This document shows positions 34,044 to 61,450 of a stretch of 64,000 bases of DNA, piece by piece. Both the position numbers and the translations under genes were made by a program. Position 1 is the stretch's first letter. Every line of letters starts with the position of its first letter. This DNA comes from Lepidodermella squamata (lineage: Eukaryota > Animalia > Gastrotricha). A model generated the notes under the pieces. It did no database searches. It was not told the DNA's origin and saw only the letters and a list, made by a program, of their open reading frames with translations. Where the stretch lies: the NCBI GenBank assembly GCA_047495785.1, contig JBLDXI010000026.1, forward strand, positions 1,302,001 through 1,366,000, written 5' to 3'.

Positions 34044-34179
34044 CCGATTTGCCACGGCATGATAAATGAATCAAAATAAATGAATGCTAATTACTAATCC
34101 TATATATCCTCTATCAAAACTAGGGCCTCTCTGAGGGCTCGGGGTGGTTATAGATGGGCGAAGCCACCCGAAAGTACTA

Positions 34180-34809: not shown

Positions 34810-34960
34810 GTGGGTCCTATAGCCGAAAATATAATGAGGAAGAAAGCTGACGGGTCCCATGGCAGACCTCGTAAAAATGGTAGTAATATAACTGAAATTA
34901 TCGAAACAACTGCACTAGATCGAGACGAATGGCGTAAAATAGTAGAGACTTCAGGAGATT
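34810..34960 (+). mobile_element. Degenerate 3' end of an RTE-like LINE
   Basis: GRPRK...TALDRDEWRKIV resembles the RTE ORF2 C-terminus. Confidence 0.45.
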
Positions 34961-35899
34961 TCGAATTTTACAACAAAAGCAAGAAACTCTCGGACATGGG
35001 AGCGGGTGACTGATTCTTTTGCTTTGCCTTGCCTTCGCCTTTCTCCAAACCCGAAAGGGTATGGACGTTCAGGGAAGTAACACAAAAAATAATGTTCACA
35101 ATGACCTTCGTTCAACCTACTTTTTTACCGCCATCAAAGCGTCTTGGCCAGGCGCTGTTTTTGAAAATCGACGCTACGCTGTTCCGTTTATTTCGGTTCT
35201 TTTTCTGATTTTGCTGTATATGCGCCAGTTTTACCGCCTGCACTTGAACTTTGACATTTAAGTAGGACAATTTTGCCGCCGAATAAATGTTTACCGCCGG
35301 ACGAGCTCGTAAACGAGAGAAACCTAAACTTCGCGCATATTAATTCGAAATGTTTGCGCGAAGTTTTAATTTTATTTGCGCGCTGAAGCCTAAATCCGAG
35401 TTATTAAACGACGCTAACGACATGATAGATAGGAAGCCAAGGAAGGGTCGCGAATCTGGTGTCATGGCACATCACATAATTGGTTATCAGGCCGGGCGGT
35501 TGATCTCGAGGAATTCATTAATAAAAGACTTGCCGAGCGTTATTCCTTTTATAACTTCGCCACTTCTCACGGAACGATCGAGTTACTATCATCGCGTGTA
35601 ATTTTCTAGATGGTGAAATGCATCATTATTAAACAGTGAACCAGTTTGTGAACAGCCGAAATATAATGCATTGCCATGCCTCTGTGGCTATCCTTTCAGT
35701 CTGAAACGAGCCAAAGTGCAAAAAATGTCGAAACCTCAATTCTATTTTAATTTGACCCCTGCGTAGCGACAAAAAATGCGGTATAAATTCCCCAAGACGA
35801 AAGCATGTTCTCATTTTGCCCTCATACATTTCCATTCAACAACTCCGTTCTGAGTGAGACCCATCAATATTTGCTCCAATTTTCTTACTGCATCAAATT

Positions 35900-37294
35900 A
35901 TGAAGATAATAATTTCGCTTCTCGTCCTGGCTGTCAGTGTTCTGGTGGCCTACAGCATTTACGGCTCGAAATCAGAAGCAGCGCTAGACAGGTTTAAATA
36001 TCCCGAACCTCTCCAATGGGGCGAATCCAACAACGAAAATGTTGCTATCAAGCCTTTCGTTGTAAACGTTTCAAAGGATGTTATTGACGATGTGAAGCGA
36101 CGAGTTGCCGCTTACAAGTTTGTTCGAGCTCTTGATGGGGCTGGTTACGACTACGGCATTTCATTCGACGCCTTAAAATCGGTGGTGAAATTCTGGCAAG
36201 AAAAGTATGACTGGTCCAAAGCTGAAGCCAAATTGAACTCACTGCCCCATTTTCAAACCGTGATACACGGAATAAACCTGCATTTCATTCACGTCAAGGC
36301 CGATGTTAAGAATAATCAAAATGTCAAAAGAATCCCGTTGCTCATGGTGCATGGATGGCCAGGATCAGTTCTCGAATTCTATCAGGCTATTCCTCAACTA
36401 CTAGAGCCGAAAGATGGTGTGGTATTTGATATAGTCGCGCCGTCAATTCCAGGTTACGGCTTCTCTGAATCGCCAACCAAGCAAGGCTGCGGACCTGTTG
36501 CTGTCGCTCAAATGTTCGGCGAATTGATGAAACGACTCGGCTACAGTAAATACGTCTACCAAGGAGGAGATTGGGGCGCTGCGATTGGATATGTCCACGC
36601 TAGAATGTTCCCCGAGAATATAATCGGATACCATTCGAATTTCGTAAGGGCTCCCTCTAATACCAAATTGGACTTGTTCAGATTAATATCAGCGACTCTC
36701 ACTCAAAGCACTCATCTATTCGGCGATGATGTTCACAAAGTTAAAATGGACAAGTTTAGTTGGTTTTTGAGTGAAATGGCCTATGCATACGAGCAAATGA
36801 CCAAGCCAGATACGGTAGGCGCAGCTCTCTCTGATACACCAGTTGGATTAGCGGCGTATATACTCGAGAAGTTCGCAACATGGGCGCAACACGTTGAGTT
36901 CAAGGACGGAAAAGGTATTTCAAATGAGGACTTGATTACAAATGTGATGATTTACTGGGTCAATGGGCATGCAACATCCTCACTTCGATTATACCGGTAA
37001 AATATTTATCGCTATTTACGGAATTCTAATACGTTATATTGTTGCAGAGAAATGAGTAAATCCCGAAAAGAGTTCGATTCTTGGCTGAGGCATCCCTACG
37101 AGGTTCTGACTGCCGTGGCTTGCTATCCCGCTGAGTTGTTGTGTTCTCCGAAATCCTTGCTCAGCTACGAAATGCCTCGTCTAGTTCAATATTCTGATAT
37201 GCCTTCTGGTGGACATTTCGCGGCTTTCGAAGAGCCAACACTGTTTTCTGAGGACCTTCGTAAAGCTACCTTGGCCTTCATCAATGCCAAGTAG
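35900..37294 (+). CDS. Epoxide hydrolase EH3 (2 exons)
   Basis: All catalytic motifs present; close paralog of EH2. Confidence 0.95.
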
Positions 37295-37930
37295 CAGAGG
37301 ATTCGCCACCGCATGAAAAAGGAAAGAAAATAAATGAATGATAATTGACCAATTCTGTTTTTCTCTTAAAAACGATGAAGCCTCTCTCAGGGTGATTATC
37401 AGGGTAATAACCAGAGCTCAGCGTCATTATTGATGAGTTTAGAGCCACCAAGTTTCTCCAAAGCGTACCGCCTGAAATGAAAGCATTTCCTTGCCGTTCA
37501 TTGCTCAGGTTTGGATCACCTTATCTTGCTCAAAGTTGAATCAAATTCATAATCGAGGAGATGCAAAAAGGCTTCTCGACCTTTCCTTTTTGCACGTCCT
37601 GGAACCATCTAGTTACTATCATTACATGTTTTCTAGAGATTGTAAATTCCAAAATTTTTGACCGGTATAACAGCCGGAATAATGCAATGAAATGCCTCGG
37701 CGTGTTTATCCTTTCATTCTCTAATGAGCCAAAGCGTAAAAAAACAGACCAATAGTACTCCATTCATAAATTTTTTCGTTTAATTTGACCCCTACGTAAC
37801 GACAAAAACGAGGCATGCTCCGTGAAGAAAGCGTTTTTACAAAATTTGCCTTTAAATATTATCTAAATCAACCTACAAGGCTGGGTGTAACGCATCATAA
37901 TTTCTGACTATACTTCAAACGTTGGGTATT

Positions 37931-39730
37931 ATGAAAACTATTATATCACTTCTGGTTCTGGCTTTCAGTGTTCTGGTGGCCTACAATCTCTGCGGCTCGA
38001 AATCAGGGCAGGACATAGACCGGTTCAGATACTCCGAACCTCTCCAATGGGGTGAATCCAACAATGTTGATATTGCTATCAAGCCGTTCGTGGTCAACGT
38101 TTCGAAAGATGTTATCGACGATGTTAAACGAAGGGTTGCCTCTTACAAGTTTCTTCGAGCTCTTGATGGAGCCGGTTATGATTACGGCATTTCTTTCGAT
38201 GCCCTAAAATCGGTAGTGAAATTCTGGCAAGAAAAGTATGACTGGTCCAAAGCCGAAGCCAAGTTGAACTCACTGCCCCAATTTCAAACTGTAATCCATG
38301 GCATAAACCTGCATTACATTCACATCAAGGCTGATATCAAGAATGATCAAAATTTCAAGAGAATTCCGGTGTTGATGGTACATGGATGGCCAGGGTCAGT
38401 CCTGGAGTTCTACGAAGCAATTCCTCAGCTATTGCAGCCGAAAGATGGGGTAGTGTTTGATATAGTCGCACCGTCAATTCCAGGCTACGGCTTCTCGGAA
38501 GCGCCAGCTAAGCAAGGTTGCGGACCTGTAGCTATCGCTCAAATGTTCGGCGAATTGATGAAACGATTAGGCTACAAGAAATACGTCTACCAAGGTGGCG
38601 ATTGGGGTGTTTTAATCGGAAATATCCACGCGCGAATGTTTCCTGATAACATCATTGGCTTCCATTCGAATGGTGCCATGGTCCCAGCTTCAACTAAATT
38701 CGACTTGTTCAGATTAATATCAGCGATTGTCACTCAATCTTCTTATCTTTTCGGTGATGACGTCCATAAAGTTAAAATAGACAATTTTAGTTGGCTGCTG
38801 AGTGAATTGGCATATGCTTACGAGCAAATGACGAAGCCAGATACGGTAGGCGCAGCTCTTTCTGACACACCGGTCGGATTGGCCGCTTATATTCTAGAGA
38901 AATTCGCAACATGGGCGGAACACGTCGAGTTCAAGGACGGAAAAGGCATTAGGAATGAAGATTTGATTACGAATGTGATGGTCTACTGGGTCTCAGGACA
39001 TGCAACATCGTCACTCCGAATCTACCGGTAGGATTTTTTTCGTTCAACATCTTTTCTGCTCAGAGCTCCTCAAATGCGCTTGCTGATAATAATCGTTTTC
39101 TCGTACCCAAATTTAGCTATTTCCGTTTTTTAGCTATTATCAGCTATTACCGTAGAGCGGTACAATTTTGAACAGGGTACAACTTTGAACATTTTTTCAA
39201 AAGTACAATTGTGAACGAACGTTTGCATTGAAAAAAATGAAAGTGTTCAAAATTGTACTTTCGTGAGTGTGAAGTACAATTTTGAACATTAACGAAATTT
39301 TCAATGCAAACGTTCGTTCAAAATTGTACTTTTGAAAAAATGTTCTACTTTGTACTTGTTCAAAATTGTACCGCTCTACGGTATCAGACAAAAAGGGTAC
39401 GAAGAGATTATTCACAAGCGCATCATGAAGAAATCGAGCGTAAAAGCTACATTTTTTCCTACTTCATTTTTAAATTGCAGCGAAATGGGTAAATCTCTGA
39501 AAGAGTACGGTTCTTGGTTGAGACATCCCTACGAGGTTCCGACTGCCGTGGCTTGCTATCCCGCTGAGCTGTTGTGTTCTCCGAAATCCTTACTGAGCTA
39601 CGAAATGCCTCGTCTTGTCCATTATGTCGATATGCCTTCTGGGGGACATTTCGCGGCTTTCGAAGAGCCAAAACTGTTTTCTGAGGACCTTCGTAAAGCT
39701 ACTTTGGCTTTTATCAAGGCCCAAGAATAA
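37931..39730 (+). CDS. Epoxide hydrolase EH4 (2 exons; MITE in the intron)
   Basis: All catalytic motifs; first ATG at 37931 (TTG at 37922 corresponds to the ATG of EH2); last exon starts near 39481. Confidence 0.92.
39150..39381. mobile_element. Palindromic 232-bp MITE (Tc1/mariner-type), copy A
   Basis: TIR CCGTAGAGCGGTACAATTTTGAACA, TA target duplication, nearly full-length foldback. Confidence 0.92.
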
Positions 39731-40833: not shown

Positions 40834-42247
40834 ATGAGTTTTATAAAAGCAATTACTTCACTGCTTGTTCTGGTAGTTAGTATTCTCTTAGCATGCAGCC
40901 TCTACGGCCGAAAATCAGAACCAGAGTTTCATCGTTTCAGATACCCTGAACCTATACAATGGGGCGAATCCAACAACGCTGACGTAGCTATCAAGCCGTT
41001 CGTGGTCAACGTTTCGAAAGATGTTATCGACGATGTTAAGCGACGAGTTGCTGCTTACAAGCCTGTTCGAGCTCTTGACGGAACTGGTTATGACTACGGC
41101 ATTTCATTCGACGCCTTAAAATCGGTAGTGAATTTTTGGCAAGAAAAGTATGACTGGACGAAAGCCGAAGCAAAACTGAACTCCCTGCCCCATTTTCAAA
41201 CCGTGATCCACGGAATAAACCTGCATTTCATTCACATCAAGGCCGATGTCAAGAATGATCAAAATGTCAAAAGAATCCCGTTACTCATGGTGCATGGATG
41301 GCCAGGATCAGTTCTAGAATTCTACCAGGCTATTCCTCAACTACTAGAGCCGAAAGATGGCGTGGTTTTCGACATTGTAGCACCGTCAATTCCAGGTTAC
41401 GGCTTCTCGGAAGCGCCAACTAAGCAAGGTTGCGGACCTGTAGCTATCGCTCAAATGTTCGGCGAATTGATGAAACGATTAGGCTACAAGAAATACGTCT
41501 ACCAAGGTGGTGATTGGGGAGCTATTATTGGAAGAATCCACGCGAGAATGTTTCCTGATAACGTCATCGGCTACCATATGAATGTAGCCGGTGCCCCAAC
41601 TTCAACTAAATTTGACCTGTTCAGATTAATAACCGCGACCATCACTCAATGCCCATATCTCTTCGGTGACGATGTCCATAAAGTTAAAAAAGACAATTTT
41701 AGTTGGCTGTTGGGTGAAACTGGATACTTCTATGAGCAAGCAACAAAGCCCGATACGATAGGAGCTGCTCTTTCTGATACCCCAGTCGGATTAGCGGCTT
41801 ATATTCTAGAGAAATTCGCAACATGGGCGGAACACGTTGAATTCAAGGACGGAAAAGGCATTTCGAACGAAGATATGATTACAAATGTGATGATTTACTG
41901 GGTCTCTGGGCATGCAACATCTGGTGTACGATTCTACCGGTATAACCCGATTTTTTGATAGTTTCGCATTTTGCATCTATAATAATTTCAGGGAAGCGGC
42001 TAAATCATTTGATATAATGAATTCGTGGGTGAAGCATCCTTACGAAGTTCCGACTGCCGTGGCTTGCTATCCCGCTGAGCTGTTGTGTTCTCCGAAATCC
42101 TTACTGAGCTACGAAATGCCTCGTCTTGTTCAATATTCTGATATGCCATCTGGTGGACATTTCGCGGCTTTCGAAGAGCCAACACTGTTTTCTGAGGACC
42201 TTCGCAAAGCTACTTTGGCTTTCATTAAAGCCCCAGAACAAAATTAG
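40834..42247 (+). CDS. Epoxide hydrolase EH5 (2 exons)
   Basis: All catalytic motifs; ETGYFYEQATKPDT. Confidence 0.95.
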
Positions 42248-44090: not shown

Positions 44091-45541
44091 TCAAACAATG
44101 GTTTTTTCTTTTTGGCGAGCGTCCAGTATAGCGATAGCAGCGGCTCGAACGTCTTTTGCGAAGAATTCCGGCTCTTCCATAGCGGCGAAATGACCGCCCC
44201 GCGGGCTGTCCACGTAATGAACCAGTTTCGGGGCCATGCGAGACAAAAGAGCCTTAGGCGAGCACGAAAGTTCGAACGGATAACACGTGACACCCATCGG
44301 AACTGAAATCGGGAGACTTTGCCAAGCTTGGATATCTTTGAATGTTTGAATGGTTTCCCTAAAACCAAGTTTTGAACCCTTTTCTACAGAAAAAATATTG
44401 AAGGGCATACTTGTAGAAACGGCCAGCAGAGGTTATGTGATTATTGATCCAATAAACCATTAAATTAGTGATGACATCATCGTTTGAAATGCCGAATCCA
44501 GGCTGGCTGCCCTTGACCTCGGCATCTTGCGTGTATTTGATGAATTTCTCAACAATCCACGCAGCAAGTCCGACAGGGCTGTCAGATAAGGCTACACCCA
44601 GCGTATCCGGCTTAGTAGCTTGCATATGGAAGTAACCAGTTTCTTCCAATAATTCGCCAAAACTCATCTTCGCCAACTTTGCCGCGTCATTTTCACCGAC
44701 GACCAATTTCGGGGCTACCATCGCGGCGAACAATTGAATTTTTTCGATAAAGCTCGCAGTAGGCGTCGTGACGAAATTTGTGTGGTAACCAATCACGTTT
44801 TCGGGGTACATGCGAGATATTTGCATACCGATAATCGAGCCCCAATCCCCGCCTTGATAGATGTACTTATCATAGCCGAGCCGCTTCATTAGCAAGTTGA
44901 AAACTTGGGCAGCTGCGACTGGGTTGAAACCTGGCTTTGAAGCAGCTTCTGAAAACGCGTAGCCCGGAATCGACGGGGCAATTACGTCGAAAGCCAGGCC
45001 ATTCTCGTCGGCCTTGGTCAGGAATGGAATCGTTCGGCAGAATTCTACGACTGATCCCGGCCAACCGTGAACCATAAGCAACGGAATCCTAAACAAAAAT
45101 CGGTTTGAATACCGAATTTGAACTCGAAATTTCTCACTTTTTCGTAGCTTTCGGGTCAGCCTTAGCGTGAATAAAATGAACTTTAAGGCCCTGGATAACA
45201 GTCGTGAATTGCGGCAGTGAATTAAGGTGGGCTGCCGCTTTCGCCCAGTCGTACTTCTCCCGCCAGTATTTGACCAGATTATCGAGCTTCTCACCGGCGA
45301 AACCGTAATCGAAACCGACGTTTTCCATCGGCGAATGTCGTCTCCAGCGGGCGAGCCTGTCCTTCAAATCGGCAATAACATTTTGGTCGAATTTTACCAC
45401 GAATTTTTGGATCGATTCATCAGCCTTTGATTCGCCCCATATTGTTGATTCGGGGTAAATCGCCGGTACATCTGCCTCTTGTTTAGAAAAATAAAGCGCG
45501 GCTCCCAACACCAAAATTGAGAGGGCAATTAAAATTTTCAT
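44091..45541 (-). CDS. Epoxide hydrolase EH7 (3 exons)
   Basis: HGWPGS, GGDWG, ETGYFHMQ, CYPFE, GGHFAAME. Confidence 0.93.
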
Positions 45542-45761: not shown

Positions 45762-48700
45762 TCATTTTGAGCCAAGAAAGGCGACACAGGCAGATCGAAC
45801 GTCGTTTGCGAAAAACTGCGGTTCTTCGATAGCCGGAAAGTGGCCACCGTGCGGAGCGTCGACGTAGTGGACCAGTTTAGGAAATTGATGAGAAAGAAGC
45901 GCCTTCGGAGCGCATACTGTCATGTCATGGGGGTAACACGTGATTCCGATCGGAACGGTGACAGGCAAAGCCATCCAAGGGTTCGTTTTGTCGCCGGTGT
46001 GGATCGCCTCTCTAAAATGAAATTTGAATTAATGATGAGTAATTATTATTTCGAGTTGTTGCAAAGTTGTTTCTAATGATTTTAACCGCTTTCGCATTAT
46101 TATAGGGCTTGTACGTGATACGTTTTGTACATTCTGTCATAACAGATCCGATTGTTGGAAATTGATATTAGTGAGCGAGCTGTCATATTAGTTCTATGGC
46201 AGCAAGTGAACGTTTTATGATACATCATTCAGTTTATAGTATCATTAAGTTTATGGTGTTTATGATGTTACTTGGACTAGGCTTTATAAGCTCAAGTTTT
46301 AAGTCAAATAAATGTCTCTTAGTCGCGGTCTGACTTATAGTTTTCAACACCGATCAAGGATCGAAGCATTCTTCCACGACGAGGAAAGCTCCATAAACCG
46401 TGCTGATGGTAGTCTCTGATAAAGTTAGGACTTTTTCTTATGCTAATTGGGCTTTTACTGCTGTAGTTGATAGCAGTTATAGCGAATAAATCAGAATAGT
46501 CACAGTGTCTCTGTTGGCCAAGAATAAAAGCATTTGAGTTACTCATGTGAGTGGCCCTAAAACAACCTTTTCCCCTTTGAAGTACTTTCCTATATAGCAT
46601 GTCTGATTTCGAGATGCCCCAGCTCAACGTGGCTCTGCCCGATCCCGAGTCTGATAATCGTACTTATGAGGCTGAGTTGTCGTCCCTATTCGGTCTACCT
46701 TGCTCGGTGTATCTTAGGAAATTACGTCGGCAAAAACGTGCCATGCTTTTGCGTTCTTCAACTCGAAAGAAGAACTTGAAATGGCAAAGTAAACTTTCTT
46801 GAGGTCTTTTTCGCGTTGTAGAGCGTTGAATTACAGCATCGGCGAGTCGATTATCAGTGAATACATTCAGAAACAGACTACCGGGAAAGTTGAGAAGATC
46901 ACGTTTTACAACTCCGCAGTCGACAAAATAAGACTGGAGAGCGAAATATTCAAATCCGACCCATGCACAGCAGGTTTTCATGTAGCCGGTGGGCATGACC
47001 CTTTCACAGCCTATGCCGTATTTGAAAGTCTGCTTGGAGATGGCAACAGATCCAAAGTGACCGAAGAGTGGTTCGCAACGAACTACGCCCGATTTTTCAG
47101 CGGTCACCTAGACAATAACACATTTGGTTTTCTTTGCTACATTTACGGGGAAGCGTTCGAAAAGGGTGTCAGGGTTGCGATAGCCTACAACTCAGCATAC
47201 CTGATTATAACCATAACGTTAATCCTTGTGTCTTAACAATGGCTCTGCAATGTCGCCAGTTTACTGTCATATCAGCTTTGTCAAACTTAGCTGACGACGC
47301 ATCGACAATTGGCCTTACCTTTGACATAGCTGATGGAGAAATTCGCGAAACACACGAAATGAGCAAAGCTTGGTTGGATATTTTTCCGTTCGACAATCAG
47401 CAGCTATACGCAGATCTATGCAAACATAACTGCAGGGGCTACTGTTCTAATGGACTAGAATTTTGTCCAATTTTGACATACCTGCATGCTCTTCTCAACG
47501 TTCGAGTTTCTATATCCGGCCTTTACGGTTTTTTCCTCCAGGATGGTTCAGGTGGAGCCTATTTGGGCGAATCTTCAGATCTAAACAAACGATTCAATGC
47601 GCACATAAACCGCTATAGCGCTGCCATCTGCTCTACCGGAAAACACGCGTGACCATACCTTTTACTACGGCGCCATCGGAAGGCGCCCTACTCCGAAAGA
47701 CCCTTTCAATCTGTTGTAGGACACAGTTCAGAGGGTGGTTTGACCTCATCAAATGAAACAAAAGCAAGTAAAAAGTTGCCACGCATGCTTTGCAAGTCTT
47801 CAAAGGAAGCAATCGTCAGATGCGAATTATAACAAGCATTCCATCTTATGTGATTGGAGTTATTATTATTTTTATAATTTGCTCAACGTTTGGTGCCTGT
47901 TTTTCGATATTTGTACTACATGCGCATTTTCTTCATTACCACTTGCGTTAGCGAATGCAGCATGTAGCTTATGCAGTTTTTTAAAGCAATGGTCTTCCTT
48001 TCTTGATTTTCGACGCTACTCCATTGTCATAAGTTTCATACGCAGTTTTCTTTTGTTAGTCATCTGTTGCGGGCTGATACTTTGTATATTTCAGCTTATC
48101 TATTTCGGCTTGGAGAAAATATCAATAAATTGCAAACGTTGAAGTATTACAAGTATTGCTTCTGTCTGTTTATTGGAATTAACTATCGAACTCGAAGCCC
48201 AAGCTGCTACACCAACACCAGCGGCTAACGCCAAAGTTGCGATAAATTCGAGTACGATCTGCGTCATCTATACCCGCGTTTTTCCCACAAAATCCGCGCG
48301 AAACGGAAGCTCTCCTGACAAGAAAGCTGGTGTCTGTTTTCGAGTCACCTCGCTGACTTACTGCTGGGCTGATCGTATCGTCTACAACAGACCCGAAACT
48401 GCGATCATCACGGGTTTCAAGTGGCCGTCTCATCGCACCGAATTCGAACACCTTTTACGCTACAACAAATCTCTGGAACCTTCTTGCTGCTATTGATAAT
48501 TGTCCTATGATGCTTATTTTTTTCAGTTCCATCGAGTTGATGTATGAAGAACTGCGAAAATCTGAGCATGCTGCTGTTTATGAAAAATTCATCGCTAACT
48601 TCGATAAGACCTATGTCCGTAGCCCTCTGGCTTGTTGGTACGAAGGTGCCCATGATCATAACATGACAAACAACGGTGTAGAAGCTAAAAACAATGCGAT

Positions 48701-51700
48701 GAAGGATGAACACGATGCATTCGCTAACAAGTTTCTTTCCCATCTCTTACAACGTCCTCCATGATTGGACGATTGAAAGGGCAAATAGTACTACTGCGAG
48801 TGTGCAACATTGACCACGTCTGCAAACATGCCATTGGAACATTGGCTTATCGGAACAAAGAACTCATGCCGGAGGAGGACGCGAACATGTTCCAGAAAGT
48901 CGAAAAGAAGCGCCACATTGGTGGGCACGAGCTACCAATTCGGCCTTGAACAAAGAAAAAACGAGGCCGATTTGTACGATGCATCTGACCTAGCCTAGCC
49001 AAAGCTGTTGAATTCGACATGCAACTGAACCGGCAGCTAAGCGTAGCTACCGAAAGCTGTTGAGTCAGCTGTGCGAGGACGCAAAGCCCCTTAGGCCCAT
49101 TAACCGAGAAAAAGTAGGAAAATCTCAGGGCAGGATGAAATTAGAATCGAGGTGCTCGGGGCACTTGAAGAGACAGGAATTGATTGGCTACACAACTTCT
49201 TTAATAAGATATGGATTGAAAATATATTTAGAAATGATATTTTGATTTTATTGCTAGTTCCAATACCGAAAAGGAGACACCAAAAATCCAGCAACTACCA
49301 ATGAATCAGCATAAAATTAGCGCTGTGGCCAAATGTTACGCAAGAATTCTCGAAAGGAAATTACGCGCGAGGGCGAAGAAAATACTAGAAGATAACCAGC
49401 GCGGCTTCATGGAGCAGAAATGACGCAGAAATAGGAGAATTTACGTCTATGTTGAAATAAATTCTCGAGAAACTCATTGTTGAAGCTTGTCAGACTCTAG
49501 GGTTGAAAATAAACGAGCCCAAAACTAATACGTAACAGAAATAAAATCAGTATCCTTGTCAAGATCCTTATCAGCGAGCTGATCTGTCCTTTCTAGGTGA
49601 ATCGACATGATATTATTAAGGAAGTAGAAAAAGATCATGGTGGCAAAGGACCTCATCAACGAGATATTTCGAAATGTCAATGATTGGAAATGTCTTGAAA
49701 GCCTCAACTTGAAAACTTCGCATCGCGAACTTGTCCGAATCCAGTTACCGACTCTCAATTTTTCCGATTATCAAAAAACCCTAAAATTAACGAAAATAAA
49801 ATAATGTTATCAGACTCTTTGGAGCCGATATTGCTCTATGGTCTATGGTGCGCCTGCCGGGTTCTGCCTTCCCCCTTCAGCCTTCAGCCGCCTTGTGGAC
49901 CTAGAAGCCTGTTGAGTCTTCCTCATAAAATCCACCCTATTGATGTCATCGCATTTGTCTGAGTCACAGTGATCGACCTCATAATAATTTGAAAAGGCGC
50001 GAGAATTCAGGTATAAGGTTTGACGACGAATAACTAGAGTTTTATCGTCGAATTTGCATGCAATTTGCATTCAAAATGAATAATACAATTTCGCCCCAAT
50101 TGCTCACTTTTTGCAGGCCTTGGCAGCTATTTTTCGCACGCCTGGCTTGATGGTATCTACTCTAAATCAGCAATCACCCTTTGCTCCGATTTACTCGGCG
50201 GGTTTATACCGAAACTTGCAGCCAGCCGATATTTGCACACCTGGTGCTTCTTCGCATTCGCAAGTACCGAATTTCCCGTTCTTACCGCCGCAACCTGCAA
50301 CTCAACAGCCTCAACCACCAAGATTGCTACAATCTCAGCCTCCGAATTAAACCTAAACGACGCGCTAAAACATCGAAGCCAAAACTACCCGCCAGCGAAC
50401 CGAAGGAGACACTGCCGATACCGAAGTCGAAACTGAAAAAGACGTCGAGGCGCCTCTCGGACTAGCTTCAGAAAACACTCCTCAGCCAATATGTACTTGT
50501 CTAACTTGGCTTTAAAGTCCTCAACTTTTTCGAAAAACATTCAAATGAATAATTTATCGGCTACTTTTACCTAATCTACGTGGCATAAGTTATCGCGCCT
50601 CGAGCGCCGCGAGGCGGATGGTTGTTAAAATAAAATCTCGATATGCCAGCAGAAAAAATAATTTCAAACTGGAATTTTTATAATCGCAACTTACTTGTAG
50701 TAACGAGCAGCAGACGTAGCGTGGTTCGAAAACCAATGCAACAAGACATTAGTGATCAGGTCATCATTCGAAATCCCCTTGCCAGCCTGGCTGCCTTTGA
50801 ACTCGGCATTCTCCGAATATTTCACGTATTTCTCAACGATCCAGGCCGCCAAACCGACCGGGCTGTCAGACAATGCGACTCCCAACGTATCCGGCTTGGT
50901 CGCTTGAATGTGGAAATATCCGGTCTCTTCCAACAGATTTGACCATTTGACGTCGCTAAGTTTCGAAGCGTCCTTCTCTCCAACGACCAATTTCGGGGCA
51001 ATTAAGGCGGCGGTTGTGTGAGTAGACTCGACAAAACTGCCGAAAGGCAGCATGGCACCAATGAAATGGCTACCAATCACGCTCTCCGGGTACATTCGGA
51101 TCATCAAAGCGCCGATACCTGACCCCCAATCACCTCCCTGGAAAATGAATTTTTCGTAGCCGAGACGTTTCATGAGTGTGTGGAAAATCTGGGTAGTAGC
51201 TAGGATGCCGAAACCGGGTTTAGTTGGGGCTTCTGAGAGCGCGAATCCGGGAATCGAAGGGGCAATCACGTCGAAGGCAACACCATTCTTATCGGGAGTC
51301 GTTAAAAATGGGATGGCACGATAGAATTCGGCGACAGTGCCAGGCCAGCCATGAACCATTAGAATAGGGACCCTATAGAAATTTCAAAAATATTCGTTTT
51401 TGGAACAATTTTTCAGCGATAAAACCAACTTTTTCGAAGCTTTTGCATCGGCCTTAGCGTGGATGAAATGGACCTTTAACCCTTGGATAACGGTCGTAAA
51501 TTGAGGCAGAGAGTTGAGATTGGCCTCGGCTTTGGCCCAGTCGTACTTTTCACGCCAATATTTGACCAAATTGTCCAAATATTCACCCGCTAAGCCGTAG
51601 TCATAGCCAACCCCCTTCAATGGCTCGTGACGGCGCCAGTTATCCAAACGTTCCTTCAAATCTTGGAGAGCTCGCTGATCCACCTTAACAGTGAAGGGGG

Positions 51701-51866
51701 TTATCGAATTGTCTGGTTTCGAGTTGCCCCATACGGTTGAATCTGGATACGCAGTGGGGACGACCTTTTCCTTGCCACAAAAGAAATAGGAAGCCACGCC
51801 GACCAAAACGGCGACTAATAAAAATGTCTTCATGTAAGAACGAGATTCAGATTTTTCCGGTGACAT
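45762..51866 (-). CDS. Epoxide hydrolase EH8 (3 exons; last intron ~4.7 kb containing TE debris)
   Basis: Exons 1-2 at 51866-50693 have no nearby exon 3; an orphan exon 3 at ~46012-45762 (CYPHD, GGHFPAIEEP) has a phase-compatible acceptor. Confidence 0.8.
46599..47652 (+). pseudogene. Fragmented ORFs ending in a GIY-YIG-like nuclease motif
   Basis: SGLYGF...AYLGESSDLNKRFNAH fits the GIY/YIG/R/H pattern; reading frame is broken. Confidence 0.45.
48400..48950 (+). mobile_element. Degenerate MULE (Mutator-like) transposase remnant
   Basis: WYEGA...TNNGVEAKNNAMK followed by SWIM-like CKHAIG; stops and frameshifts. Confidence 0.65.
49320..49520 (+). mobile_element. LINE reverse transcriptase fragment
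   Basis: Manual translation AKCYARILERKLRARAKKILEDNQRGF resembles the start of a non-LTR RT domain. Confidence 0.5.
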
Positions 51867-52052: not shown

Positions 52053-53668
52053 TTAATTGCTTTTCTTCTTCTCATCCTCAGCACGCGCAGCTAAGATGGC
52101 AGTAACACCTTTGCGGAAATCAGCAGCGAAAATCTCGGGAACTTCCATCGCAGCGAAATGGCCGCCATGGGCGATGTCTTCGTAATGAACGAGGCGACGA
52201 ATCGAGTTCTTGGCAAGGGCCTTCGGGGCGCAGTTGATGTCGTTCGGGTAGCAACCGAGAGCTGTTGGGACGGTGATTGGCTTTTTCGCCCAACCATTGA
52301 ATTCATTGTGAAGCTGAACATGCTCTCTGGAAAATTAAAAAAAATTTAAATTTAAAAAATTAAAAATTTAAAAATTATAATTAATTAATTTATTATAATT
52401 TAATAAAAAATCAAGTATGTATTTAAAAATTGCCACTTAATTTTTAAAGCTCAATTCCTTTCAAGTTTGTTTCTTCAAATTTGATTACTCAGCTTGAAAC
52501 ATAAATTTGCAAAAAAGTAAGAACTCACTTGTAAAATCGGCCAGCAGAGGTGATGCGGTTCTTCAACCAGTACACCATGACGTTGGTAAGGAGGTCATCA
52601 TTGGAAATGCCGCCTTTATCTCCCTTGAATTCAGCTTGCTCCGTTGCGAGTTCAAACTTTTCGGCAACCCAAGCAAGAAAACCAACCGGGCTGTCAGAAA
52701 GCCCGACGCCTAGCGTATCAGGCTTGGTAGCTTGAATGTGGAAATAGCCGGATTCTTCGAGTAGCATTTCCTTGAATTTGATATTTCCAAGCCTGGCAGC
52801 GTCTTCGGCGTCCAGAACAAGGGACGGGGCAATTAAAGCAGCGGCTAGGTGAAGCTTTTCGCAGGTTGTCGCAATGCTAACCGGGAACATATTGAGATGA
52901 ATGCCAATAACGCTATCAGGGTCGATTCTAGCAACCATATTGCCAATGGCCGAACCCCAATCTCCGCCTTGATAGATGAATTTTTCATAGCCGAGACGTT
53001 TCATCAAAATGTGGTACATCTGAGCAGCGGCGATTGGGCTGAAACCGGGTTTGACTGGAGCCTCGGAAAATGCAAAACCAGGAATTGAAGGGGCAACAAT
53101 ATCAAACGCAACTCCATCAGGTCCAGGCTTCGTCAGAAGAGGAATAATGCGGTAGAATTCGACCACTGAACCCGGCCATCCGTGGCTAATTAGAAGCGGG
53201 ATCCTTTGAACAAAGTAAAAATAGCAATTTTTAACAAAATTTCATCATATCTCACTTCTTGGTTGCCTTTGGATCAGCTTTCACGTGAATAAAGTGAAGT
53301 CTGAGTCCTTGAATAACGGTGGTGAATTGCGGGAATTGGTTCACGCGAGACTCGAATTTCGCAAAATCGAATTTTTCACGCCAGTATTTGACCAAATTAT
53401 CAAGTCGCTCGCCGGCGAAACCGTAGAACCTACCGACGCCTTGCAGAGGTTCGTGACGGCGCCACGATGCCAGACGGCTTTTAAGGTCTTCAATATCTTT
53501 CGGGTCAACTTTAAACGTGAACGGCTTGATTATGACATCAGGCCCCTTTTGATTGCCCCAAATTACGTCATCGGGGTGTAAGAACGTTTTCCCGTCATCA
53601 TTGCAACACCGGGTATAGAAGTAGGCTCCAGCCGCTACCAAAGTTCCCAAAATTATTAAACCCTTCAT
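52053..53668 (-). CDS. Epoxide hydrolase EH9 (3 exons)
   Basis: GGDWG, EESGYFHIQ, RFYK, CYPND, GGHF; ends KKKSN. Confidence 0.93.
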
Positions 53669-55485: not shown

Positions 55486-56220
55486 TTATTGTTTAGCTTT
55501 CTTTTCTTCTTCGGCGCGAGCTGCAAGGATGGAGTTAACAGCTTTGCGGAAATCTTTGGCGAACAAGTCAGGGACCTCCATTGCAGCAAAATGGCCACCG
55601 TGGGGCAGATCTTCGTAATGAACCAAATTTGGCATTGCAATTTTCACCAAAGCCTTTGGAGTGCAGGAGATCTCGTTCGGGTAGCATGAAACACCAGACG
55701 GCACAGTTATTTGCTTCTTGGCCCAAGCATCAAACTCATTGTGAAGTTGGACATGCTCCCTGAAAATCAAAATTAGTCAAAGAAAAGAGATAAACCAATC
55801 AAATTCAAACTTTTTAGTGGCTATTGGATCAGCTTTGGCATGGATGAAATGCACCTTCAGACCTTGAATAACCGTAGTAAACTGCGGAAACTGGTTAACG
55901 CGAGACTCGAAGTTCGCAAAATCAAACTTTTCCCGCCAATATTTGACAAAGTTGTCCAACCGCTCACCGGCAAATCCGTAAGATCGGCCAACACCTGGAA
56001 GCGGTTCGTGGCGGCGCCATGAATTCAATCGGCGTTTCAGATCTTCGATGTCCTTGGGGTCAGCTTTGAAAGTGAATGGTTTGATGGAAGCGTCCTCCTT
56101 AGAGCTGCCCCAAACTGTATCATCCGGGTACAAAAATAGTTTCTCTTCATCATGGCAGCACCGAGTAGCTAAATAAGCACCAAAGGCAACGAGAGCTCCG
56201 ATTATAACATAACCTTTCAT
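55486..56220 (-). CDS. EH11: epoxide hydrolase lacking the central catalytic exon (in-frame 227-aa product); mini-protein or pseudogene
   Basis: Exon 1 (56220-55811) joins exon 3 (55759-55486) across a 51-nt GT-AG intron, both phase 2; no HGWP or GDWG. Confidence 0.8.
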
Positions 56221-58197: not shown

Positions 58198-59091
58198 TGT
58201 AAGAAATCTGTTTAAGAGAAATTAATTGAGTTATGAAATCAATTTGACGGTTAAAATTGCCAATGTATAAGTGGATATTTTTTGCCAGTTGTCATGGCCA
58301 AGGAACCAGAACGAATAGAGGAAATATTTTGTGAACTTTCTTGCTAATTTGATCGGCTTCCAGCTCTCTCATACCTTTGAAAATGAGAATTCGCATGAGA
58401 TGTTAGGAAACAGCAAATGGATTTATTAGATTAATCTTAAGGCGGCTTAATTCGCTGCTCGACCCTAAAATAGAATTTCCAGAATATGTCCACGTAAATG
58501 AGGGTTGGAATTCGTGGCTTGAAATAAAGACCCTGATAATTGACAAAAAATGAAAGCTGCGGTAGGACAAATATAGCACCGGCAAAAAATCGTGTATAGT
58601 ATTTCTGCAAGCATTCACTCTCACCTTTTTTCATATATTCCAGGTATATTATTGTATACACACTGCCTGAGGCTCTTTTATGAAGCAGGATAAAAAAATA
58701 CGGTTCTCTTTTTTACCTCAGCAAATAATTCCACTGTCCGGATAGATTTTGACCATCAGAGTTAAAAAAATGAAGATTAACTCTAGGACAGAAAACAAAG
58801 ATAAGATAAAAATCATTGGTCATTTTTATTGCTTGTTCCTTCTCTCGCTCTCATTTTGTCGCCAGTCAGACAAAAATTACACATTCATTTCATTCAAATC
58901 AAATCATAACAATAAATGGCCTAAGCATTATTATTATTATTAGCAGTTATATCAGATCACCGATTGCATAGAAGGTTCAGTACATGGACTAGAGAATTCA
59001 TTACATATATTATATTGATGGCACGGGGTTTTTCACACGTAGCACTTGAATGTTATGAGGCGCAATAATTGACTGATTACAGCTGCGAAAT

Positions 59092-61450
59092 TCAACGCTT
59101 GCCTGCTTCCTTCTTCTGCTCTTGCTTCGGAGCCTGAGTTGTCGTGCTAGGCTTCTGAGTCGTGGTAGTAGTGGTGGTGGTGGTTGGCTTCTGGGTAGTT
59201 GTGGTAGCCTTGGTAGTGGTGGTCGTGGGTTTCGGGGTGGTAGTTGTGGTTGGCTTGGGGGTAGTTGTAGTTGTAGTAGTCGGCTTCTGAGTAGTCGTAG
59301 TTGTCGGTTTTTGCGTGGTAGTGGTCGTCGGCTTTTGGGTCGTAGTTGTAGTCGTAGGTTTCTGAGTTGTGGTAGTCGTAGGCTTAGGGGTGGTGGTAGT
59401 TGGTTTAGCAGTCGTGGTAGTAGTCGTAGTAGGCTTAGCAGTGGTTGTGGCTGTGGTCGGTTTCGCCGTAGTAGTGGTAGTTGGCTTCTGGGTAGTCGTG
59501 GTCGTAGTAGTCGTAGTTGGTTTCTGGGTGGTGGTTGTTGTGGTAGTTGTTGGTTTCTGAGTAGTAGTTGTAGTGGTCTGTTTCGCAGTGCTAGTCGTCG
59601 CAGTTTTCACCGGTTCCTCAGCCACCTTCTTGCCCTTAGCAGTCACTTCCTTCTCCCGAGCCTCGACAAAAGCCGCAACAGCATTTCGAACATCCTGCGC
59701 GAAGAAAGCCGGCTCTTCAAACGCAGCGAAATGGCCACCGTGTGGGCTGTCAACGTAGTGGACCAGTTTAGGCATTTGGAATTTCAGCAACGCTTTCGGG
59801 GTGCAGAGAAGTTCGAATGGGTAGCAGGTGTAACCAGCCGGGATTTTGATCGGATGAGCCATCCACGCTTCAAAATCAGCCCTGGTCTGAGTGTTCTCCC
59901 TGAAAATTAATCAATCAATTGAAAAACTTGAAAAATCCTCCTTAATTAATGAAAAATTTCAGAAATGACAAAACTATACACCGCAGCGAGGGGTTTTGCT
60001 TAAATGATTCAGGGAAACAAAGGTTGGCAGGATGATTCCATATTTTCCTGCAAATTTTGAAAATTTTCTATTTTTTCATCATTCTTGCAGTCTAGCGGCT
60101 ATTCGCAGTTGACAGGTCACCGTTTTTCAAGCTAATAAGCACATAATCCTCCAGAAGTACGGACGGGCGGAAGGACGGAACACGCCCACAACAGGGTGGA
60201 TTCCCCGCCATCCAGGAGGTTGCGATTAATTATAAAATTCCGCGAGTAAGGTTCAGCATGAATTTTGAAGATGAGTAAACAAACCCTGGAGATATAATCA
60301 AACTTACTTATAAAATCTAGCCGCTGATGTAGCACTGCTAGTGACCCAGTAAAGCATGACGTTGGTCAGGATATCATCGTTGGACAGTCCCTTGCCAGCA
60401 GGGCTGCCTTTGAACTCGGCATTCTCCGAAGCCTTGATGAAAAGCTCAAGAAGCCAAGAAGCCAAACCAACCGGGCTATCAGTGAGCGCGACGCCAATCG
60501 TATCAGGCTTAGTCGCCTGGACGTGGTAGAAGCCCAAATCCTCTAGAATTTCGAAAATCGACAACTTTGAAACTTTAGCAGCATCCTGAGGCCCGACGAT
60601 AATTTTCGGCGCGACTAAAGCAGCGGCTAGTTGCAGCTTATCAGCGATAGTGCCCATCGGAATAATCTCAAAATTAAGGTGGACGCCGATAACACTTTCA
60701 GGGAAAAGACGTGCCGCCATATGGCCAATCATAGAGCCCCAATCGCCGCCTTGATACACGAATTTTTCATACCCGAGGCGTTTCATTAGCGTATGGAAGA
60801 CTTGAGCGGCGGCGATTGTGTTGAAGCCAGGCTTGGAAGGAGCCTCAGAAAATGCAAAGCCAGGAATAGACGGCGCAACAACGTCGAACGCAACTCCGTT
60901 TTTATCAGCAGTTGTCAACAATGGAATGACTCGGAGAAATTCAGCAATTGACCCAGGCCAGCCGTGAACCATCAACAGCGGGATTCTAAATTTTCGAGAA
61001 ATTTCAAATATTCCAAATATTCAAATATTTCCCTGATTTTCCTTACTTTTTAGTAGCTTTCGGGTCAGCTTTTGCATGAATAAAGTGAACTTTGAGGCCT
61101 TGAATGACTGTCGTGAAATGAGAAAAGGAGTTGAGGCGAGCTTCCTGCTTGGCCCAATCGTACTTCTCCCGCCAATATTTCACTAGATTATCAAGCTTCT
61201 CGCCGGCGAATCCATACGAATCACCGACATTTTTCAGCGTCTCGTGACGCCGCCAGTGGGCTAGTCTATCTTTCAAATCAATCAGCACTTTTTGATCCAC
61301 CTTAACAGTAAACGGCTTTATCGAGGCATCTTCCTTCGAGTTGCCCCAAATCGTGGTTTCGGGATAGGCGGTTGGATGAGATTTGTTCTTATTGGCAATA
61401 TAAAACGCCAATCCGGCGACCAAAACCGCGAAAATTATAAATTTCTTCAT
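59092..61450 (-). CDS. Epoxide hydrolase EH13 with a C-terminal Thr-rich mucin-like tail (3 exons)
   Basis: HGWPGS, GGDWG, RFYK, CYPFE, GGHF, then ~160 aa of (Q/A/P)KPT(n) repeats in the same ORF. Confidence 0.92.
59130..59600 (-). repeat. Coding Thr-rich degenerate repeat, KPT(4-9) units
   Basis: Runs of ACN codons with varied third positions. Confidence 0.9.

What the first reader, a model, noticed from the sequence alone, without database searches (positions are those of the whole stretch)
59092..61450. Epoxide hydrolase fused to a mucin-like Thr-rich tail, with an altered lid tyrosine
Seen: ~160 aa of KPTTTTT repeats after the catalytic domain. Synonymous codons are diversified, so the repeat appears maintained at the protein level. 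The first lid motif reads DLGFYHVQ instead of E(S/T)GYFHxQ, putting Phe at the Tyr299-equivalent position. Established: microsomal EHs normally end shortly after GGHF and face the cytosol, while mucin-type O-glycosylation needs luminal or extracellular exposure. Inference: a secreted or surface/mucus-tethered EH that could act on extracellular ligands of the neighbouring GPCRs, possibly with changed chemistry.
Basis: partly seen in the sequence, partly recalled or inferred. Interest (0 to 1): 0.75.

Follow-up and report, generated by a model that had tools for sequence, protein, structure and literature searches.

The report
Epoxide hydrolase with mucin-like tail
One gene in a 13-copy array of microsomal-type epoxide hydrolases in a small invertebrate carries a real, transcribed, selectively maintained 170-residue threonine-rich (mucin-like) tail seen on none of about 285 relatives, which suggests this normally cytosol-facing detoxifying enzyme is exposed to the secretory pathway or the outside, though its location is untested.

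Summary
A three-exon minus-strand gene (61450..59092, 629 aa by my splice model) encodes a microsomal/juvenile-hormone-type epoxide hydrolase (Pfam EHN + Abhydrolase_1). Its last exon runs, with no stop, from the catalytic His (GGHF) into a 170-aa tail: 102 Thr in about 17 units of (Q/P/A)KPT4-9.

An intron-free contig in run X1 confirms both introns, and another X1 contig bridges the catalytic-domain/tail boundary.

A second copy or haplotype in three runs differs in the tail by 14 synonymous changes against 1 replacement (p=2e-7). All tail indels are multiples of 3, so the tail is kept as protein.

None of the 12 paralogs in the window has such a tail. Neither do about 285 fetched homologues. 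Two other lineages have non-Thr disordered tails.

HGWP, nucleophile Asp, Glu, His and the second lid Tyr are present. The first lid Tyr is swapped (GFYH instead of GYFH), as also in a springtail homologue.

Secretory or extracellular exposure is plausible from the MKK N-terminus, the lineage-specific Cys pair and the tail composition. It is not shown. The link to the neighbouring GPCRs has no support.

The scan had already noted the array itself on this same window.

The parts
61047..61450 (-). Exon 1: residues 1-134 plus two bases of codon 135. It holds the N-terminal hydrophobic segment and most of the EHN domain.
   Evidence: Pfam EHN E=1.2e-24. The donor AAAA|GTAAGG is read. The junction 61047/60985 appears in X1 contig record 7, with one synonymous difference.
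61394..61441 (-). Hydrophobic signal or anchor segment F4-A19 (FIIFAVLVAGLAFYIA). It is preceded by M-K-K and followed by N-K-N-K.
   Evidence: Translation. All 13 paralogs have the same kind of start. Its orientation and any cleavage were not testable here.
60986..61046 (-). Intron 1 (61 nt, GT..AG).
60308..60985 (-). Exon 2: residues 136-360 plus parts of two split codons. It holds the alpha/beta-hydrolase core strands and the whole lid.
   Evidence: Pfam Abhydrolase_1 E=1.4e-20. Match to 4QLA JHEH E=2e-54.
60955..60966 (-). HGWP oxyanion-hole motif (residues 142-145).
60742..60744 (-). Nucleophile Asp216 in GGDWG.
   Evidence: The role is assigned by homology to Asp226 of human EPHX1 (PMC8331186).
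60523..60534 (-). First lid motif G-F-Y-H (residues 286-289). Phe287 sits at the canonical Tyr position and Tyr288 one residue later.
   Evidence: Alignments. The Tyr codon carries a synonymous TAC>TAT variant in the second copy.
60349..60351 (-). Second lid Tyr347, in NVMLYW.
59900..60307 (-). Intron 2 (408 nt, GT..AG, TTTTCAG acceptor).
   Evidence: X1 record 7 skips 59898/60307 (cut +1), and X1 depth is zero across 59935-60274.
59605..59899 (-). Exon 3, catalytic part: Cys386 and Cys393 flanking the acid Glu390 (YTCYPFELLC), His417 in GGHF, and the C-terminal helix.
   Evidence: Among the homologues fetched, the Cys pair occurs only in this lineage.
59095..59604 (-). Exon 3, tail: 170 aa of Thr/Pro/Lys/Gln-rich mucin-like repeats, ending ...QAPKQEQKKEAGKR. 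There is no C-terminal hydrophobic segment.
   Evidence: X1 record 5 spans 59492-59673 across the domain/tail boundary. Variants are 14 synonymous to 1 replacement, and indels are 3, 3 and 12 nt. The single-sequence model shows no confident structure.
59092..59094 (-). Stop codon TGA, followed by the 3' UTR. AATAAA-like signals lie near 58935 and 58830.
   Evidence: X1 record 1 covers 59000-59115.

Best explanation
This is a functional, expressed member of the microsomal epoxide hydrolase / juvenile-hormone epoxide hydrolase family. It is the end copy of a 13-gene tandem array.

Origin of the tail (inferred): the short Lys/Glu/Ala-rich C-terminus seen in its paralogs has grown, inside the last exon, into a 170-aa Pro/Thr-rich (PTS, mucin-type) repeat domain.

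Catalytic machinery (shown by sequence): the HGWP oxyanion hole, Asp216 nucleophile, Glu390-His417 relay and second lid Tyr347 are all present. The first lid Tyr has moved one position (Phe287-Tyr288). I therefore expect ordinary two-step epoxide hydrolysis, perhaps with altered substrate positioning.

Proposed mechanism (inferred):
- The N-terminal MKK + 16-residue hydrophobic segment directs the chain into the ER with the bulk of the protein on the lumenal side, as a cleaved signal or a type II anchor.
- The Cys386/Cys393 pair closes a disulfide around the loop that carries the catalytic Glu.
- The tail is densely O-glycosylated in the Golgi.
- The tail then acts like the C-terminal mucin tail of carboxyl ester lipase: an extended, hydrated, protease-resistant appendage that aids secretion and stability, or holds the enzyme in a mucus, glycocalyx or cuticle layer. 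There the enzyme would hydrolyse environmental or dietary epoxides.

Shown here: gene structure, transcription, purifying selection on the tail, uniqueness of the tail, intact catalytic motifs. Inferred: topology, glycosylation, disulfide, site of action, substrate.
For: Gene and domains:
-.

Splicing and transcription:
- X1 record 7 removes both introns. X1 has no depth in intron 2. X1 contigs cover the tail and 3' UTR at depths like those of the catalytic exons. Record 5 bridges the domain/tail boundary.

Selection on the tail:
- A second copy or haplotype is present in all three runs. It differs in the tail at 15 listed sites: 14 are third-position synonymous changes and 1 is Ala>Thr (binomial p=2.4e-7 against 28% synonymous sites).
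- Indels of 3, 3 and 12 nt keep the frame.
- The catalytic part shows 23 of 24 synonymous changes.
- Thr codon usage equals that of the rest of the gene. The tail is therefore old, equilibrated coding sequence rather than a fresh microsatellite.

Uniqueness:
- The 12 paralogs stop at most about 20 residues past the last residue aligned to the target's catalytic part.
- No fetched homologue has a 40-aa window with more than 15 S+T. Here it is about 28.

Hints for lumenal or extracellular exposure:
- The N-flank (MKK, +2 plus the free amino end) is more positive than the C-flank (+1 net over 15 residues).
- Vertebrate mEH, a type I protein with a cytosolic catalytic domain (PMC5696493), starts MWLE (P0294).
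- mEH remains active when its topology is inverted (title of Friedberg et al. 1996, cited in PMC5696493; the paper itself is not held).
- The whole protein has only two Cys. They lie 7 residues apart around the catalytic Glu. They are conserved in all 12 paralog copies whose alignment reaches that loop and in the nearest metagenomic relatives, but in none of the other homologues.
- The word search with exon 3 matched only Thr-rich linkers on secreted-type domains: CAP, DPBB/RlpA, fn3 and a 'predicted secreted protein'.
- Unchecked scan notes report many mucin stalks on extracellular proteins of this genome.

Precedent:
- Carboxyl ester lipase has an O-glycosylated C-terminal repeat tail thought to protect it from degradation and to aid secretion or solubility (PMC8692231). 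That it is an alpha/beta-hydrolase-fold enzyme is my own knowledge, not from the passages read.
Against: - No topology, signal-peptide or O-glycosylation predictor could be run, and no protein data exist.
- The N-terminal segment is of the same kind as in the 12 tail-less paralogs. It also resembles many invertebrate homologues: 55 of 138 full-length homologues with a scorable hydrophobic run have a net positive N-flank. Nothing targeting-specific came with the tail.
- The C-flank (NKNK) is also basic, so the charge bias is small.
- The 16-residue hydrophobic stretch is compatible with a membrane anchor of either orientation.
- The catalytic domain has no N-glycosylation sequon. The only one is N22, right beside the hydrophobic segment.
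- One paralog ends KKSN, a dilysine-like motif that would work only on a cytosolic C-terminus. This is weak evidence, because the paralog tails are Lys-rich anyway.
- The tail is distal to the catalytic domain and ends without an anchor, so it cannot be a stalk.
- X1 is only guessed to be RNA by the tool. My evidence that it is RNA is the intron-free contig.
- The tail is covered by several short contigs, not by one.
Confidence: 0.55

Rival explanations
1. Same gene and same enzyme, but with the classical type I orientation of mammalian mEH: N-terminus in the lumen, catalytic domain and tail in the cytosol. The tail would then be an unglycosylated (or O-GlcNAc- or phospho-modified) disordered spacer or 'entropic bristle'. 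It would change solubility, crowding or partner access on the ER surface.
For: - mEH and P450s are type I proteins with cytosolic catalytic domains (PMC5696493).
- The N-terminal segment does not differ in kind from the tail-less paralogs.
- There are no N-glycosylation sequons in the catalytic domain.
- One paralog has a KKSN ending.
- Other lineages carry non-mucin disordered tails on this enzyme. The tick R. sanguineus EPHX1 isoform X1 has about 150 aa rich in P/A/K/Q. The metagenomic relatives have about 70 aa rich in K/Q/S/E. A disordered tail as such therefore does not need the secretory pathway.
Against: - A tail of 60% Thr with regularly spaced Pro is the signature of O-glycosylated PTS domains of secretory-pathway proteins. 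This rests on established knowledge. The tail-driven hits are all on secreted-type domains.
- The positive N-flank differs from the MWLE start of vertebrate mEH.
- The lineage-specific Cys pair also fits a lumenal setting.
Confidence: 0.27
2. The tail is a functionally neutral repeat expansion (replication slippage in the 3' coding end) that is merely tolerated. The gene may be drifting towards loss of function, with the lid Tyr-to-Phe change as a first sign.
For: - It is a single gene among 13, and no orthologue with the tail was found.
- The array contains degenerate members: a copy lacking exon 2 and copies with AYAF/AYAY lids.
- Length variation of 3-12 nt exists between copies.
Against: - 14 of 15 tail differences between the two copies are synonymous (p=2e-7). 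All indels are in frame. The catalytic part shows 23 of 24 synonymous changes.
- Codon usage is equilibrated and the DNA repeats have diverged, so the tail is old and has been kept open.
- All catalytic residues but one are intact, and the missing Tyr reappears at i+1.
Confidence: 0.13
3. Annotation or assembly artefact: the tail is not part of the mature mRNA (a cryptic intron or alternative 3' end), or the repeat is mis-assembled.
For: - The tail is assembled only as short contigs in the runs. Depth dips at 59255-59339 in X1.
- X1 is labelled 'RNA?' only.
Against: - The ORF is continuous in the window.
- Identical tail pieces are recovered independently in three runs from three studies.
- X1 record 5 bridges the domain/tail boundary, and X1 record 1 runs from the last codons through the stop codon into the 3' UTR.
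- No joint skipping the tail was reported (table 5).
- The synonymous-only divergence is in the minus-strand frame.
Confidence: 0.05

Closest known systems
Microsomal epoxide hydrolase EPHX1 / insect juvenile hormone epoxide hydrolase (Bombyx mori JHEH, PDB 4QLA)
   Same: - EHN N-terminal domain plus alpha/beta-hydrolase core and lid.
- E=2e-54 to 4QLA over exon 2.
- HGWP, GGDWG Asp, PFE Glu, GGHF His and the second lid Tyr are all present.
- An N-terminal hydrophobic segment is present.
   Different: - It has 213 residues from the GGHF motif to the C-terminus, against a family median of 31.
- 170 of these form a Thr-rich repeat.
- The first lid Tyr (Tyr299 in human, Tyr298 in Bombyx; PMC8331186, PMC5806408) is Phe, with Tyr at +1.
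- A Cys pair flanks the catalytic Glu.
- The N-flank is MKK instead of the vertebrate MWLE.
Carboxyl ester lipase (CEL / bile-salt-stimulated lipase)
   Same: It is an alpha/beta-hydrolase-fold enzyme (my own knowledge) whose last exon encodes a C-terminal tandem-repeat, Pro/Thr-containing tail. The tail is heavily O-glycosylated. It is thought to protect against degradation and to help secretion or solubility (PMC8692231).
   Different: - It belongs to an unrelated hydrolase subfamily and is a classical secreted protein.
- Its repeats are 11-aa units of different composition.
- O-glycosylation is demonstrated there and only inferred here.
Rhipicephalus sanguineus epoxide hydrolase 1 isoform X1 (XP_037518579.1; P0170), and the metagenomic relatives P0016 / L001:7316-7798
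   Same: They belong to the same enzyme family and carry a long low-complexity C-terminal extension after the catalytic domain, of about 150 aa and about 70 aa.
   Different: - Their tails are Pro/Ala/Lys/Gln-rich, or Lys/Gln/Ser/Glu-rich, not Thr-rich.
- They show no (Q)KPTn repeat.
- No 40-aa window in them has more than 15 S+T.
- P0016 is closest to a tail-less paralog (45087..44413, 62% identity) rather than to this gene (57%). These tails are therefore independent.
Allacma fusca EH homologue CAG7712467.1 (P0095)
   Same: It has the same GFYH swap of the first lid motif.
   Different: It is 44% identical and has no Thr-rich tail. It lacks the GG[HN][FWY] His motif (RSLGRF at the expected place), and its C-terminal region looks mis-predicted or degenerate.

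Membership tests
Microsomal-type epoxide hydrolase (EPHX1/JHEH; Pfam EHN + Abhydrolase_1) | EHN N-terminal domain followed by an alpha/beta-hydrolase fold | tested here: met
   PF06441 E=1.2e-24 on exon 1 and PF00561 E=1.4e-20 on exon 2. Match to 4QLA E=2e-54.
Microsomal-type epoxide hydrolase (EPHX1/JHEH; Pfam EHN + Abhydrolase_1) | Catalytic triad (Asp nucleophile in GGDWG, acid Glu, His in GGHF) and the HGWP oxyanion motif | tested here: met
   HGWP142-145, Asp216, Glu390 and His417 are found by motif and alignment. Roles are assigned from PMC8331186 and PMC5806408.
Microsomal-type epoxide hydrolase (EPHX1/JHEH; Pfam EHN + Abhydrolase_1) | Two lid tyrosines that polarise the epoxide (human Tyr299, Tyr374) | tested here: inconclusive
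   The second Tyr is present (Tyr347 in NVMLYW). The first position is Phe287, with Tyr288 next to it. Whether Tyr288 reaches the active site needs a full-length 3D model or structure, which was not made here.
Microsomal-type epoxide hydrolase (EPHX1/JHEH; Pfam EHN + Abhydrolase_1) | N-terminal single membrane anchor with a cytosolic catalytic domain (type I) | not testable with these tools
   A hydrophobic segment F4-A19 is present. Its orientation and any cleavage cannot be predicted with the tools at hand. The charge bias mildly favours the opposite orientation.
Microsomal-type epoxide hydrolase (EPHX1/JHEH; Pfam EHN + Abhydrolase_1) | Epoxide hydrolase activity | not testable with these tools
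   This needs an enzyme assay.
Mucin-like (PTS) domain | Long tract dominated by Thr/Ser with Pro, arranged in tandem repeats, with no stable fold | tested here: met
   The 170-aa tail has 102 T and 19 P in about 17 (Q/P/A)KPTn units. TRF periods are 21-36 nt. AlphaFold single-sequence pLDDT is mostly below 50-65 with almost no secondary structure (a weak test).
Mucin-like (PTS) domain | Exposure to the Golgi lumen and dense O-GalNAc glycosylation | not testable with these tools
   Only indirect hints exist.

The most novel reading that the evidence does not exclude
The whole lineage-specific EH array, not only this copy, may have been re-targeted to the secretory pathway. The signs are a positive N-flank and a lineage-specific Cys pair that could lock the loop carrying the catalytic Glu with a disulfide. 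The tailed copy would then be the first natural mucin-tethered extracellular epoxide hydrolase of the mEH family. It would be a natural counterpart of the engineered topology-inverted mEH. It would work in gut or surface mucus on environmental epoxides, with a lid in which the epoxide-polarising Tyr has slid one residue.
Probability: 0.3. Interest if true: 0.65.

Novelty: new variant of a known kind. Interest (0 to 1): 0.45.

Why it matters
mEH-family enzymes are textbook ER-membrane enzymes with a cytosolic catalytic domain. Reports of alternative topologies in mammals have stayed controversial. A naturally occurring family member whose C-terminus carries a domain type that normally makes sense only in the secretory lumen would be a clean test case. 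Tag it, test it for O-glycans, and the orientation of the whole enzyme is read out.

If it is extracellular, it would show that animals can move epoxide detoxification, or oxylipin inactivation, outside the cell. It would also add a second example, after carboxyl ester lipase, of an alpha/beta hydrolase stabilised or tethered by a C-terminal mucin tail.

The Tyr slide (GYFH to GFYH), seen independently in a springtail, is a small but testable point about how rigid the lid-tyrosine geometry really is.

Tried and rejected
1. Word search with exon 3 including the tail. The candidate list was swamped by Thr-rich linkers and returned no EH. It was useful only as a hint that such tracts sit on secreted-type domains.

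2. Scan of JGI metagenome contigs with exon 2. It returned only 39-45% identical loci, mostly from soil-type samples and apparently microbial (not checked). There were no close relatives, so conservation of the tail across species could not be tested.

3. Search with the nearest relative P0016. No annotated protein of this genome and no closer relative appeared. The best named hits are about 40% identical (arthropods, Macrostomum, Lingula, fish).

4. The search of earlier findings by sequence and by words for mucin tails came back blank.

5. The Friedberg et al. 1996 topology-inversion paper could not be read. Only its title, from the reference list of PMC5696493, is used. Details of which charges were changed are my own recollection and are not relied on.

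6. AlphaFold on exon 3 alone gave mean pLDDT 48. It shows no confident fold in the tail but is too weak to say more.

7. The antisense ORF 59122..59910 (+) is rejected. It is the mirror image of the ACN-rich frame, and the variants are synonymous in the minus-strand frame only.

8. P0016 as an orthologue with an 'ancestral tail' is rejected. It is closer to the tail-less paralog at 45087..44413.

9. The GPCR-ligand link was considered and dropped for lack of any evidence beyond residence in the same 64 kb.

10. All searches were exon by exon, by reference. Residue numbers of the joined model are arithmetic only.
Full report
**What is there**

The interval 59092..61450 is one minus-strand gene with three exons.
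- Exon 1 is 61450..61047. Exon 2 is 60985..60308. Exon 3 is 59899..59095, followed by the TGA at 59094..59092.
- Donors are GTAAG. Acceptors are TTTAG and TTTTCAG. The two split codons both read Lys.
- The model gives 629 residues. Exon residue numbers were added arithmetically. The joined protein was never sent to a search or fold tool.

Domain and structure matches:
- Exon 1 matches Pfam EHN (E=1.2e-24). Exon 2 matches Abhydrolase_1 (E=1.4e-20).
- The best solved relative of exon 2 is Bombyx mori juvenile hormone epoxide hydrolase 4QLA (E=2e-54). Next come bacterial and fungal microsomal-type epoxide hydrolases.

The motifs that define the catalytic machinery of this family are present. Roles are assigned from PMC8331186 and PMC5806408.
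- HGWP (142-145).
- Asp216 in GGDWG.
- Glu390 in YPFE.
- His417 in GGHF.
- The second lid Tyr347 in NVMLYW.

**The tail**

Exon 3 continues without interruption from the C-terminal helix of the hydrolase into 170 residues (59604..59095).
- The composition is 102 Thr, 21 Lys, 19 Pro, 13 Gln and 9 Ala. These form about 17 units of (Q/P/A)KPT4-9. The tail ends ...QAPKQEQKKEAGKR, with no hydrophobic end.
- At the DNA level the repeats are only 63-80% alike, with periods of 21-36 nt.
- The four Thr codons are used 40/32/16/14, in the same proportions as in the rest of the gene (chi-square p=0.87). This is old, equilibrated coding sequence, not a recent single-codon expansion.
- A single-sequence AlphaFold run on exon 3 gives no confident structure for the tail (a weak test).

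**Is it in the mRNA, and is it kept?**

Three public runs from three studies hold the locus.

Run X1 behaves like cDNA.
- It has no depth across intron 2 (59935-60274).
- Its 914-nt record 7 joins 59898/60307 and 60985/61050. These are exactly the two introns of my model. The three letters between the sides of the second joint amount to one synonymous AAA>AAG change.
- X1 contigs cover the tail and the 3' UTR at depths similar to those of the catalytic exons.
- Record 5 spans 59492-59673 and so bridges the domain/tail boundary at 59604. Record 1 covers 59000-59115, that is, the last seven codons, the stop codon and the 3' UTR.
- No joint that skips the tail was reported.
- Caveats: the tool only guesses that X1 is RNA, and the repeat is assembled in short pieces.

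All three runs hold two versions of the locus, which are haplotypes or a duplicate.
- Of the 15 listed differences in the tail, 14 are synonymous third-position changes and one is Ala>Thr. The binomial p is 2.4e-7 against the 28% of sites that are synonymous.
- The three tail indels are 3, 3 and 12 nt.
- The catalytic part shows 23 of 24 synonymous changes.
- The tail is therefore under purifying selection about as strict as that on the enzyme.

**Context**

The gene is the last of 13 tandem EH genes between 26.5 and 61.5 kb.
- None of the other 12 has a tail. They stop at most about 20 residues past the last residue aligned to the target's catalytic part, typically ...AARAEEEKK(x).
- All 13 begin with Met-Lys (or MG-R or similar) followed by a hydrophobic stretch.
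- Two rhodopsin-type GPCR ORFs lie at 28.8-31.6 kb, about 27 kb from this gene.

**Relatives elsewhere**

An exhaustive HMMER search with exon 2 found 7088 relatives.
- The best is P0016 (57% identity). It comes from ENA metagenome contigs of an unidentified organism with 38% G+C that also has EH arrays.
- Two of its EH genes have C-terminal extensions of about 70 aa, Lys/Gln/Ser/Glu-rich in P0016 and mixed hydrophilic in its neighbour, with no Thr runs.
- P0016 is nearer to a tail-less paralog than to this gene.
- The tick Rhipicephalus sanguineus EPHX1 isoform X1 carries a Pro/Ala/Lys/Gln-rich tail of about 150 aa.

Among about 285 family members fetched:
- The median distance from the GGHF motif to the C-terminus is 31 residues (213 here).
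- None has a 40-residue window with more than 15 Ser+Thr (about 28 here).
- A literature search for epoxide hydrolase together with mucin-like or threonine-rich terms found nothing relevant.
- Disordered C-terminal tails on this enzyme are therefore not unique. A mucin-type tail is unique within what I could reach.
- The limits are these. Only the best 150 and 120 hits of the two searches could be inspected. No annotated proteome of this animal or of close kin exists in the collections. The JGI metagenome scan gave only 39-45% identical loci.

**The lid tyrosine**

- The motif is DLGFYHVQ. Seven paralogs read E(E/T/S)GYFH, one reads GYFY, and three read AYAF/AYAY.
- In 4QLA the aligned residue is the first lid Tyr.
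- Among 112 representative homologues with a recognisable motif, Phe at this position occurs in two: Allacma fusca (GFYH) and Argiope bruennichi (GFLH).
- Counting this gene, two of the three Phe cases have Tyr at the next position. Among proteins with the canonical Tyr, about 5 of 105 do (Fisher p=0.01; small numbers).
- GYYH also exists and gives a plausible path GYFH > GYYH > GFYH.
- The Tyr288 codon carries a synonymous difference in the second copy.
- I read this as a one-residue slide of the tyrosine that is probably compensated, not as a loss. Whether Tyr288 reaches the epoxide needs a full-length model or a mutant.

**Where does the protein go?**

For a lumenal or extracellular location:
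- The tail has the composition of O-glycosylated PTS domains (established knowledge).
- The tail-driven hits sit on secreted-type domains.
- The N-flank MKK is more positive than the C-flank. Vertebrate mEH, a type I protein with a cytosolic catalytic domain (PMC5696493), starts MWLE.
- mEH stays active when its topology is inverted (title of Friedberg et al. 1996, cited in PMC5696493; the paper is not held).
- The protein has only two cysteines, at 386 and 393, bracketing the catalytic Glu. They are conserved in all 12 paralog copies whose alignment reaches that loop and in the nearest metagenomic relatives, but in no other homologue. That pattern suggests a disulfide.
- Unchecked scan notes say this genome uses mucin stalks widely on extracellular proteins.

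Against it:
- The N-terminal segment is no different from that of the tail-less paralogs or of many invertebrate homologues.
- The C-flank NKNK is also basic.
- The catalytic domain has no N-glycosylation sequon.
- One paralog ends KKSN.
- The tail is distal and unanchored, so it is a tail and not a stalk.

**Most likely mechanism**

It is an active epoxide hydrolase delivered to the secretory pathway. Its C-terminal PTS tail becomes heavily O-glycosylated and works like the mucin tail of carboxyl ester lipase (PMC8692231). The tail would protect, solubilise or retain the enzyme in a mucus or glycocalyx layer.

- Probability about 0.55.
- Rivals: a cytosolic disordered tail (0.27), a tolerated neutral expansion (0.13), and an artefact (0.05).
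- The suggested link to the GPCR neighbours has no support.

**Verdict**

- This is a new variant of a known enzyme family, of moderate interest.
- The 13-copy array and the exon-2-less copy had already been noted by the scan on this same window.

Noticed in passing
window 26485-61450: There is a tandem array of 13 microsomal-type EH genes. A plus-strand group lies at 32.6-42.2 kb. A minus-strand group lies at 42.4-61.5 kb, with one more copy at 26.5-28.1 kb. Introns are very short, and in several plus-strand copies exons 1 and 2 fall in one ORF.
   Followed up: partly
window 55507-56220 (-): This EH copy has exon 1 (56220..55813) and exon 3 (55758..55507) but no exon 2 between them. It therefore lacks the nucleophile and the lid.
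   Followed up: partly
window 33071-39025 (+), three paralogs: Three paralogs read AYAF or AYAY in place of GYFH in the first lid motif, and one (41275..41937) reads GYFY. The lid motif is diversifying across the array.
   Followed up: no
window 59803-59826 (-), the same position in the 12 paralog copies aligned there, and L001/L082-L085: A Cys pair 7 residues apart flanks the catalytic Glu (C-Y-P-x-E-x-x-C). It is conserved in this lineage and in its nearest metagenomic relatives. It is absent from the other homologues fetched, which have C..H, A..H or S..H. It may be a disulfide.
   Followed up: partly
window 27569-26850 (-): The exon 2 equivalent of this paralog has 16 extra residues inside the lid motif (GYFHEQVGIFRIVLANNLNFFQSTKPE). 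This is probably an unrecognised 48-nt in-frame intron.
   Followed up: no
window 45765-51833 (-): The paralog with exons 1 and 2 at 51833..50697 has no exon 3 nearby. The next exon 3-like piece is at 46010..45765, about 4.7 kb away. Either the intron is long, or these are two partial genes.
   Followed up: no
window 52055-52325 (-): This paralog ends ...AEDEKKKSN, which matches a KKxx dilysine ER-retrieval pattern. That pattern would work only on a cytosolic C-terminus. It may be chance in a Lys-rich end.
   Followed up: no
proteins P0075, P0108, P0137, P0093, P0101, P0145 and others: A set of EH homologues from other organisms have a C-terminal hydrophobic segment. They end in SKL-, SRL- or SKA-like tripeptides that resemble peroxisomal targeting signals.
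   Followed up: no
L001:7316-7798 and its copies in L082, L084 and L085: One EH gene of the metagenomic relative has lost the catalytic Glu (CYSSAGMC) but keeps GGHF and a hydrophilic tail of about 70 aa.
   Followed up: no
window 59772/60389 in run X3: One X3 contig joins 59772 to 60389, skipping 616 nt with CA..GT ends. This is not a canonical intron. It is probably a chimeric or paralog-derived contig.
   Followed up: no
window 6600-7808 (-), 10814-14320 (+), 19170-20351 (+), 28814-31616 (+): Other genes in the window are a GDP-fucose protein O-fucosyltransferase, coatomer alpha (COPA), an Xaa-Pro aminopeptidase (M24) and two rhodopsin-family GPCR ORFs.
   Followed up: partly
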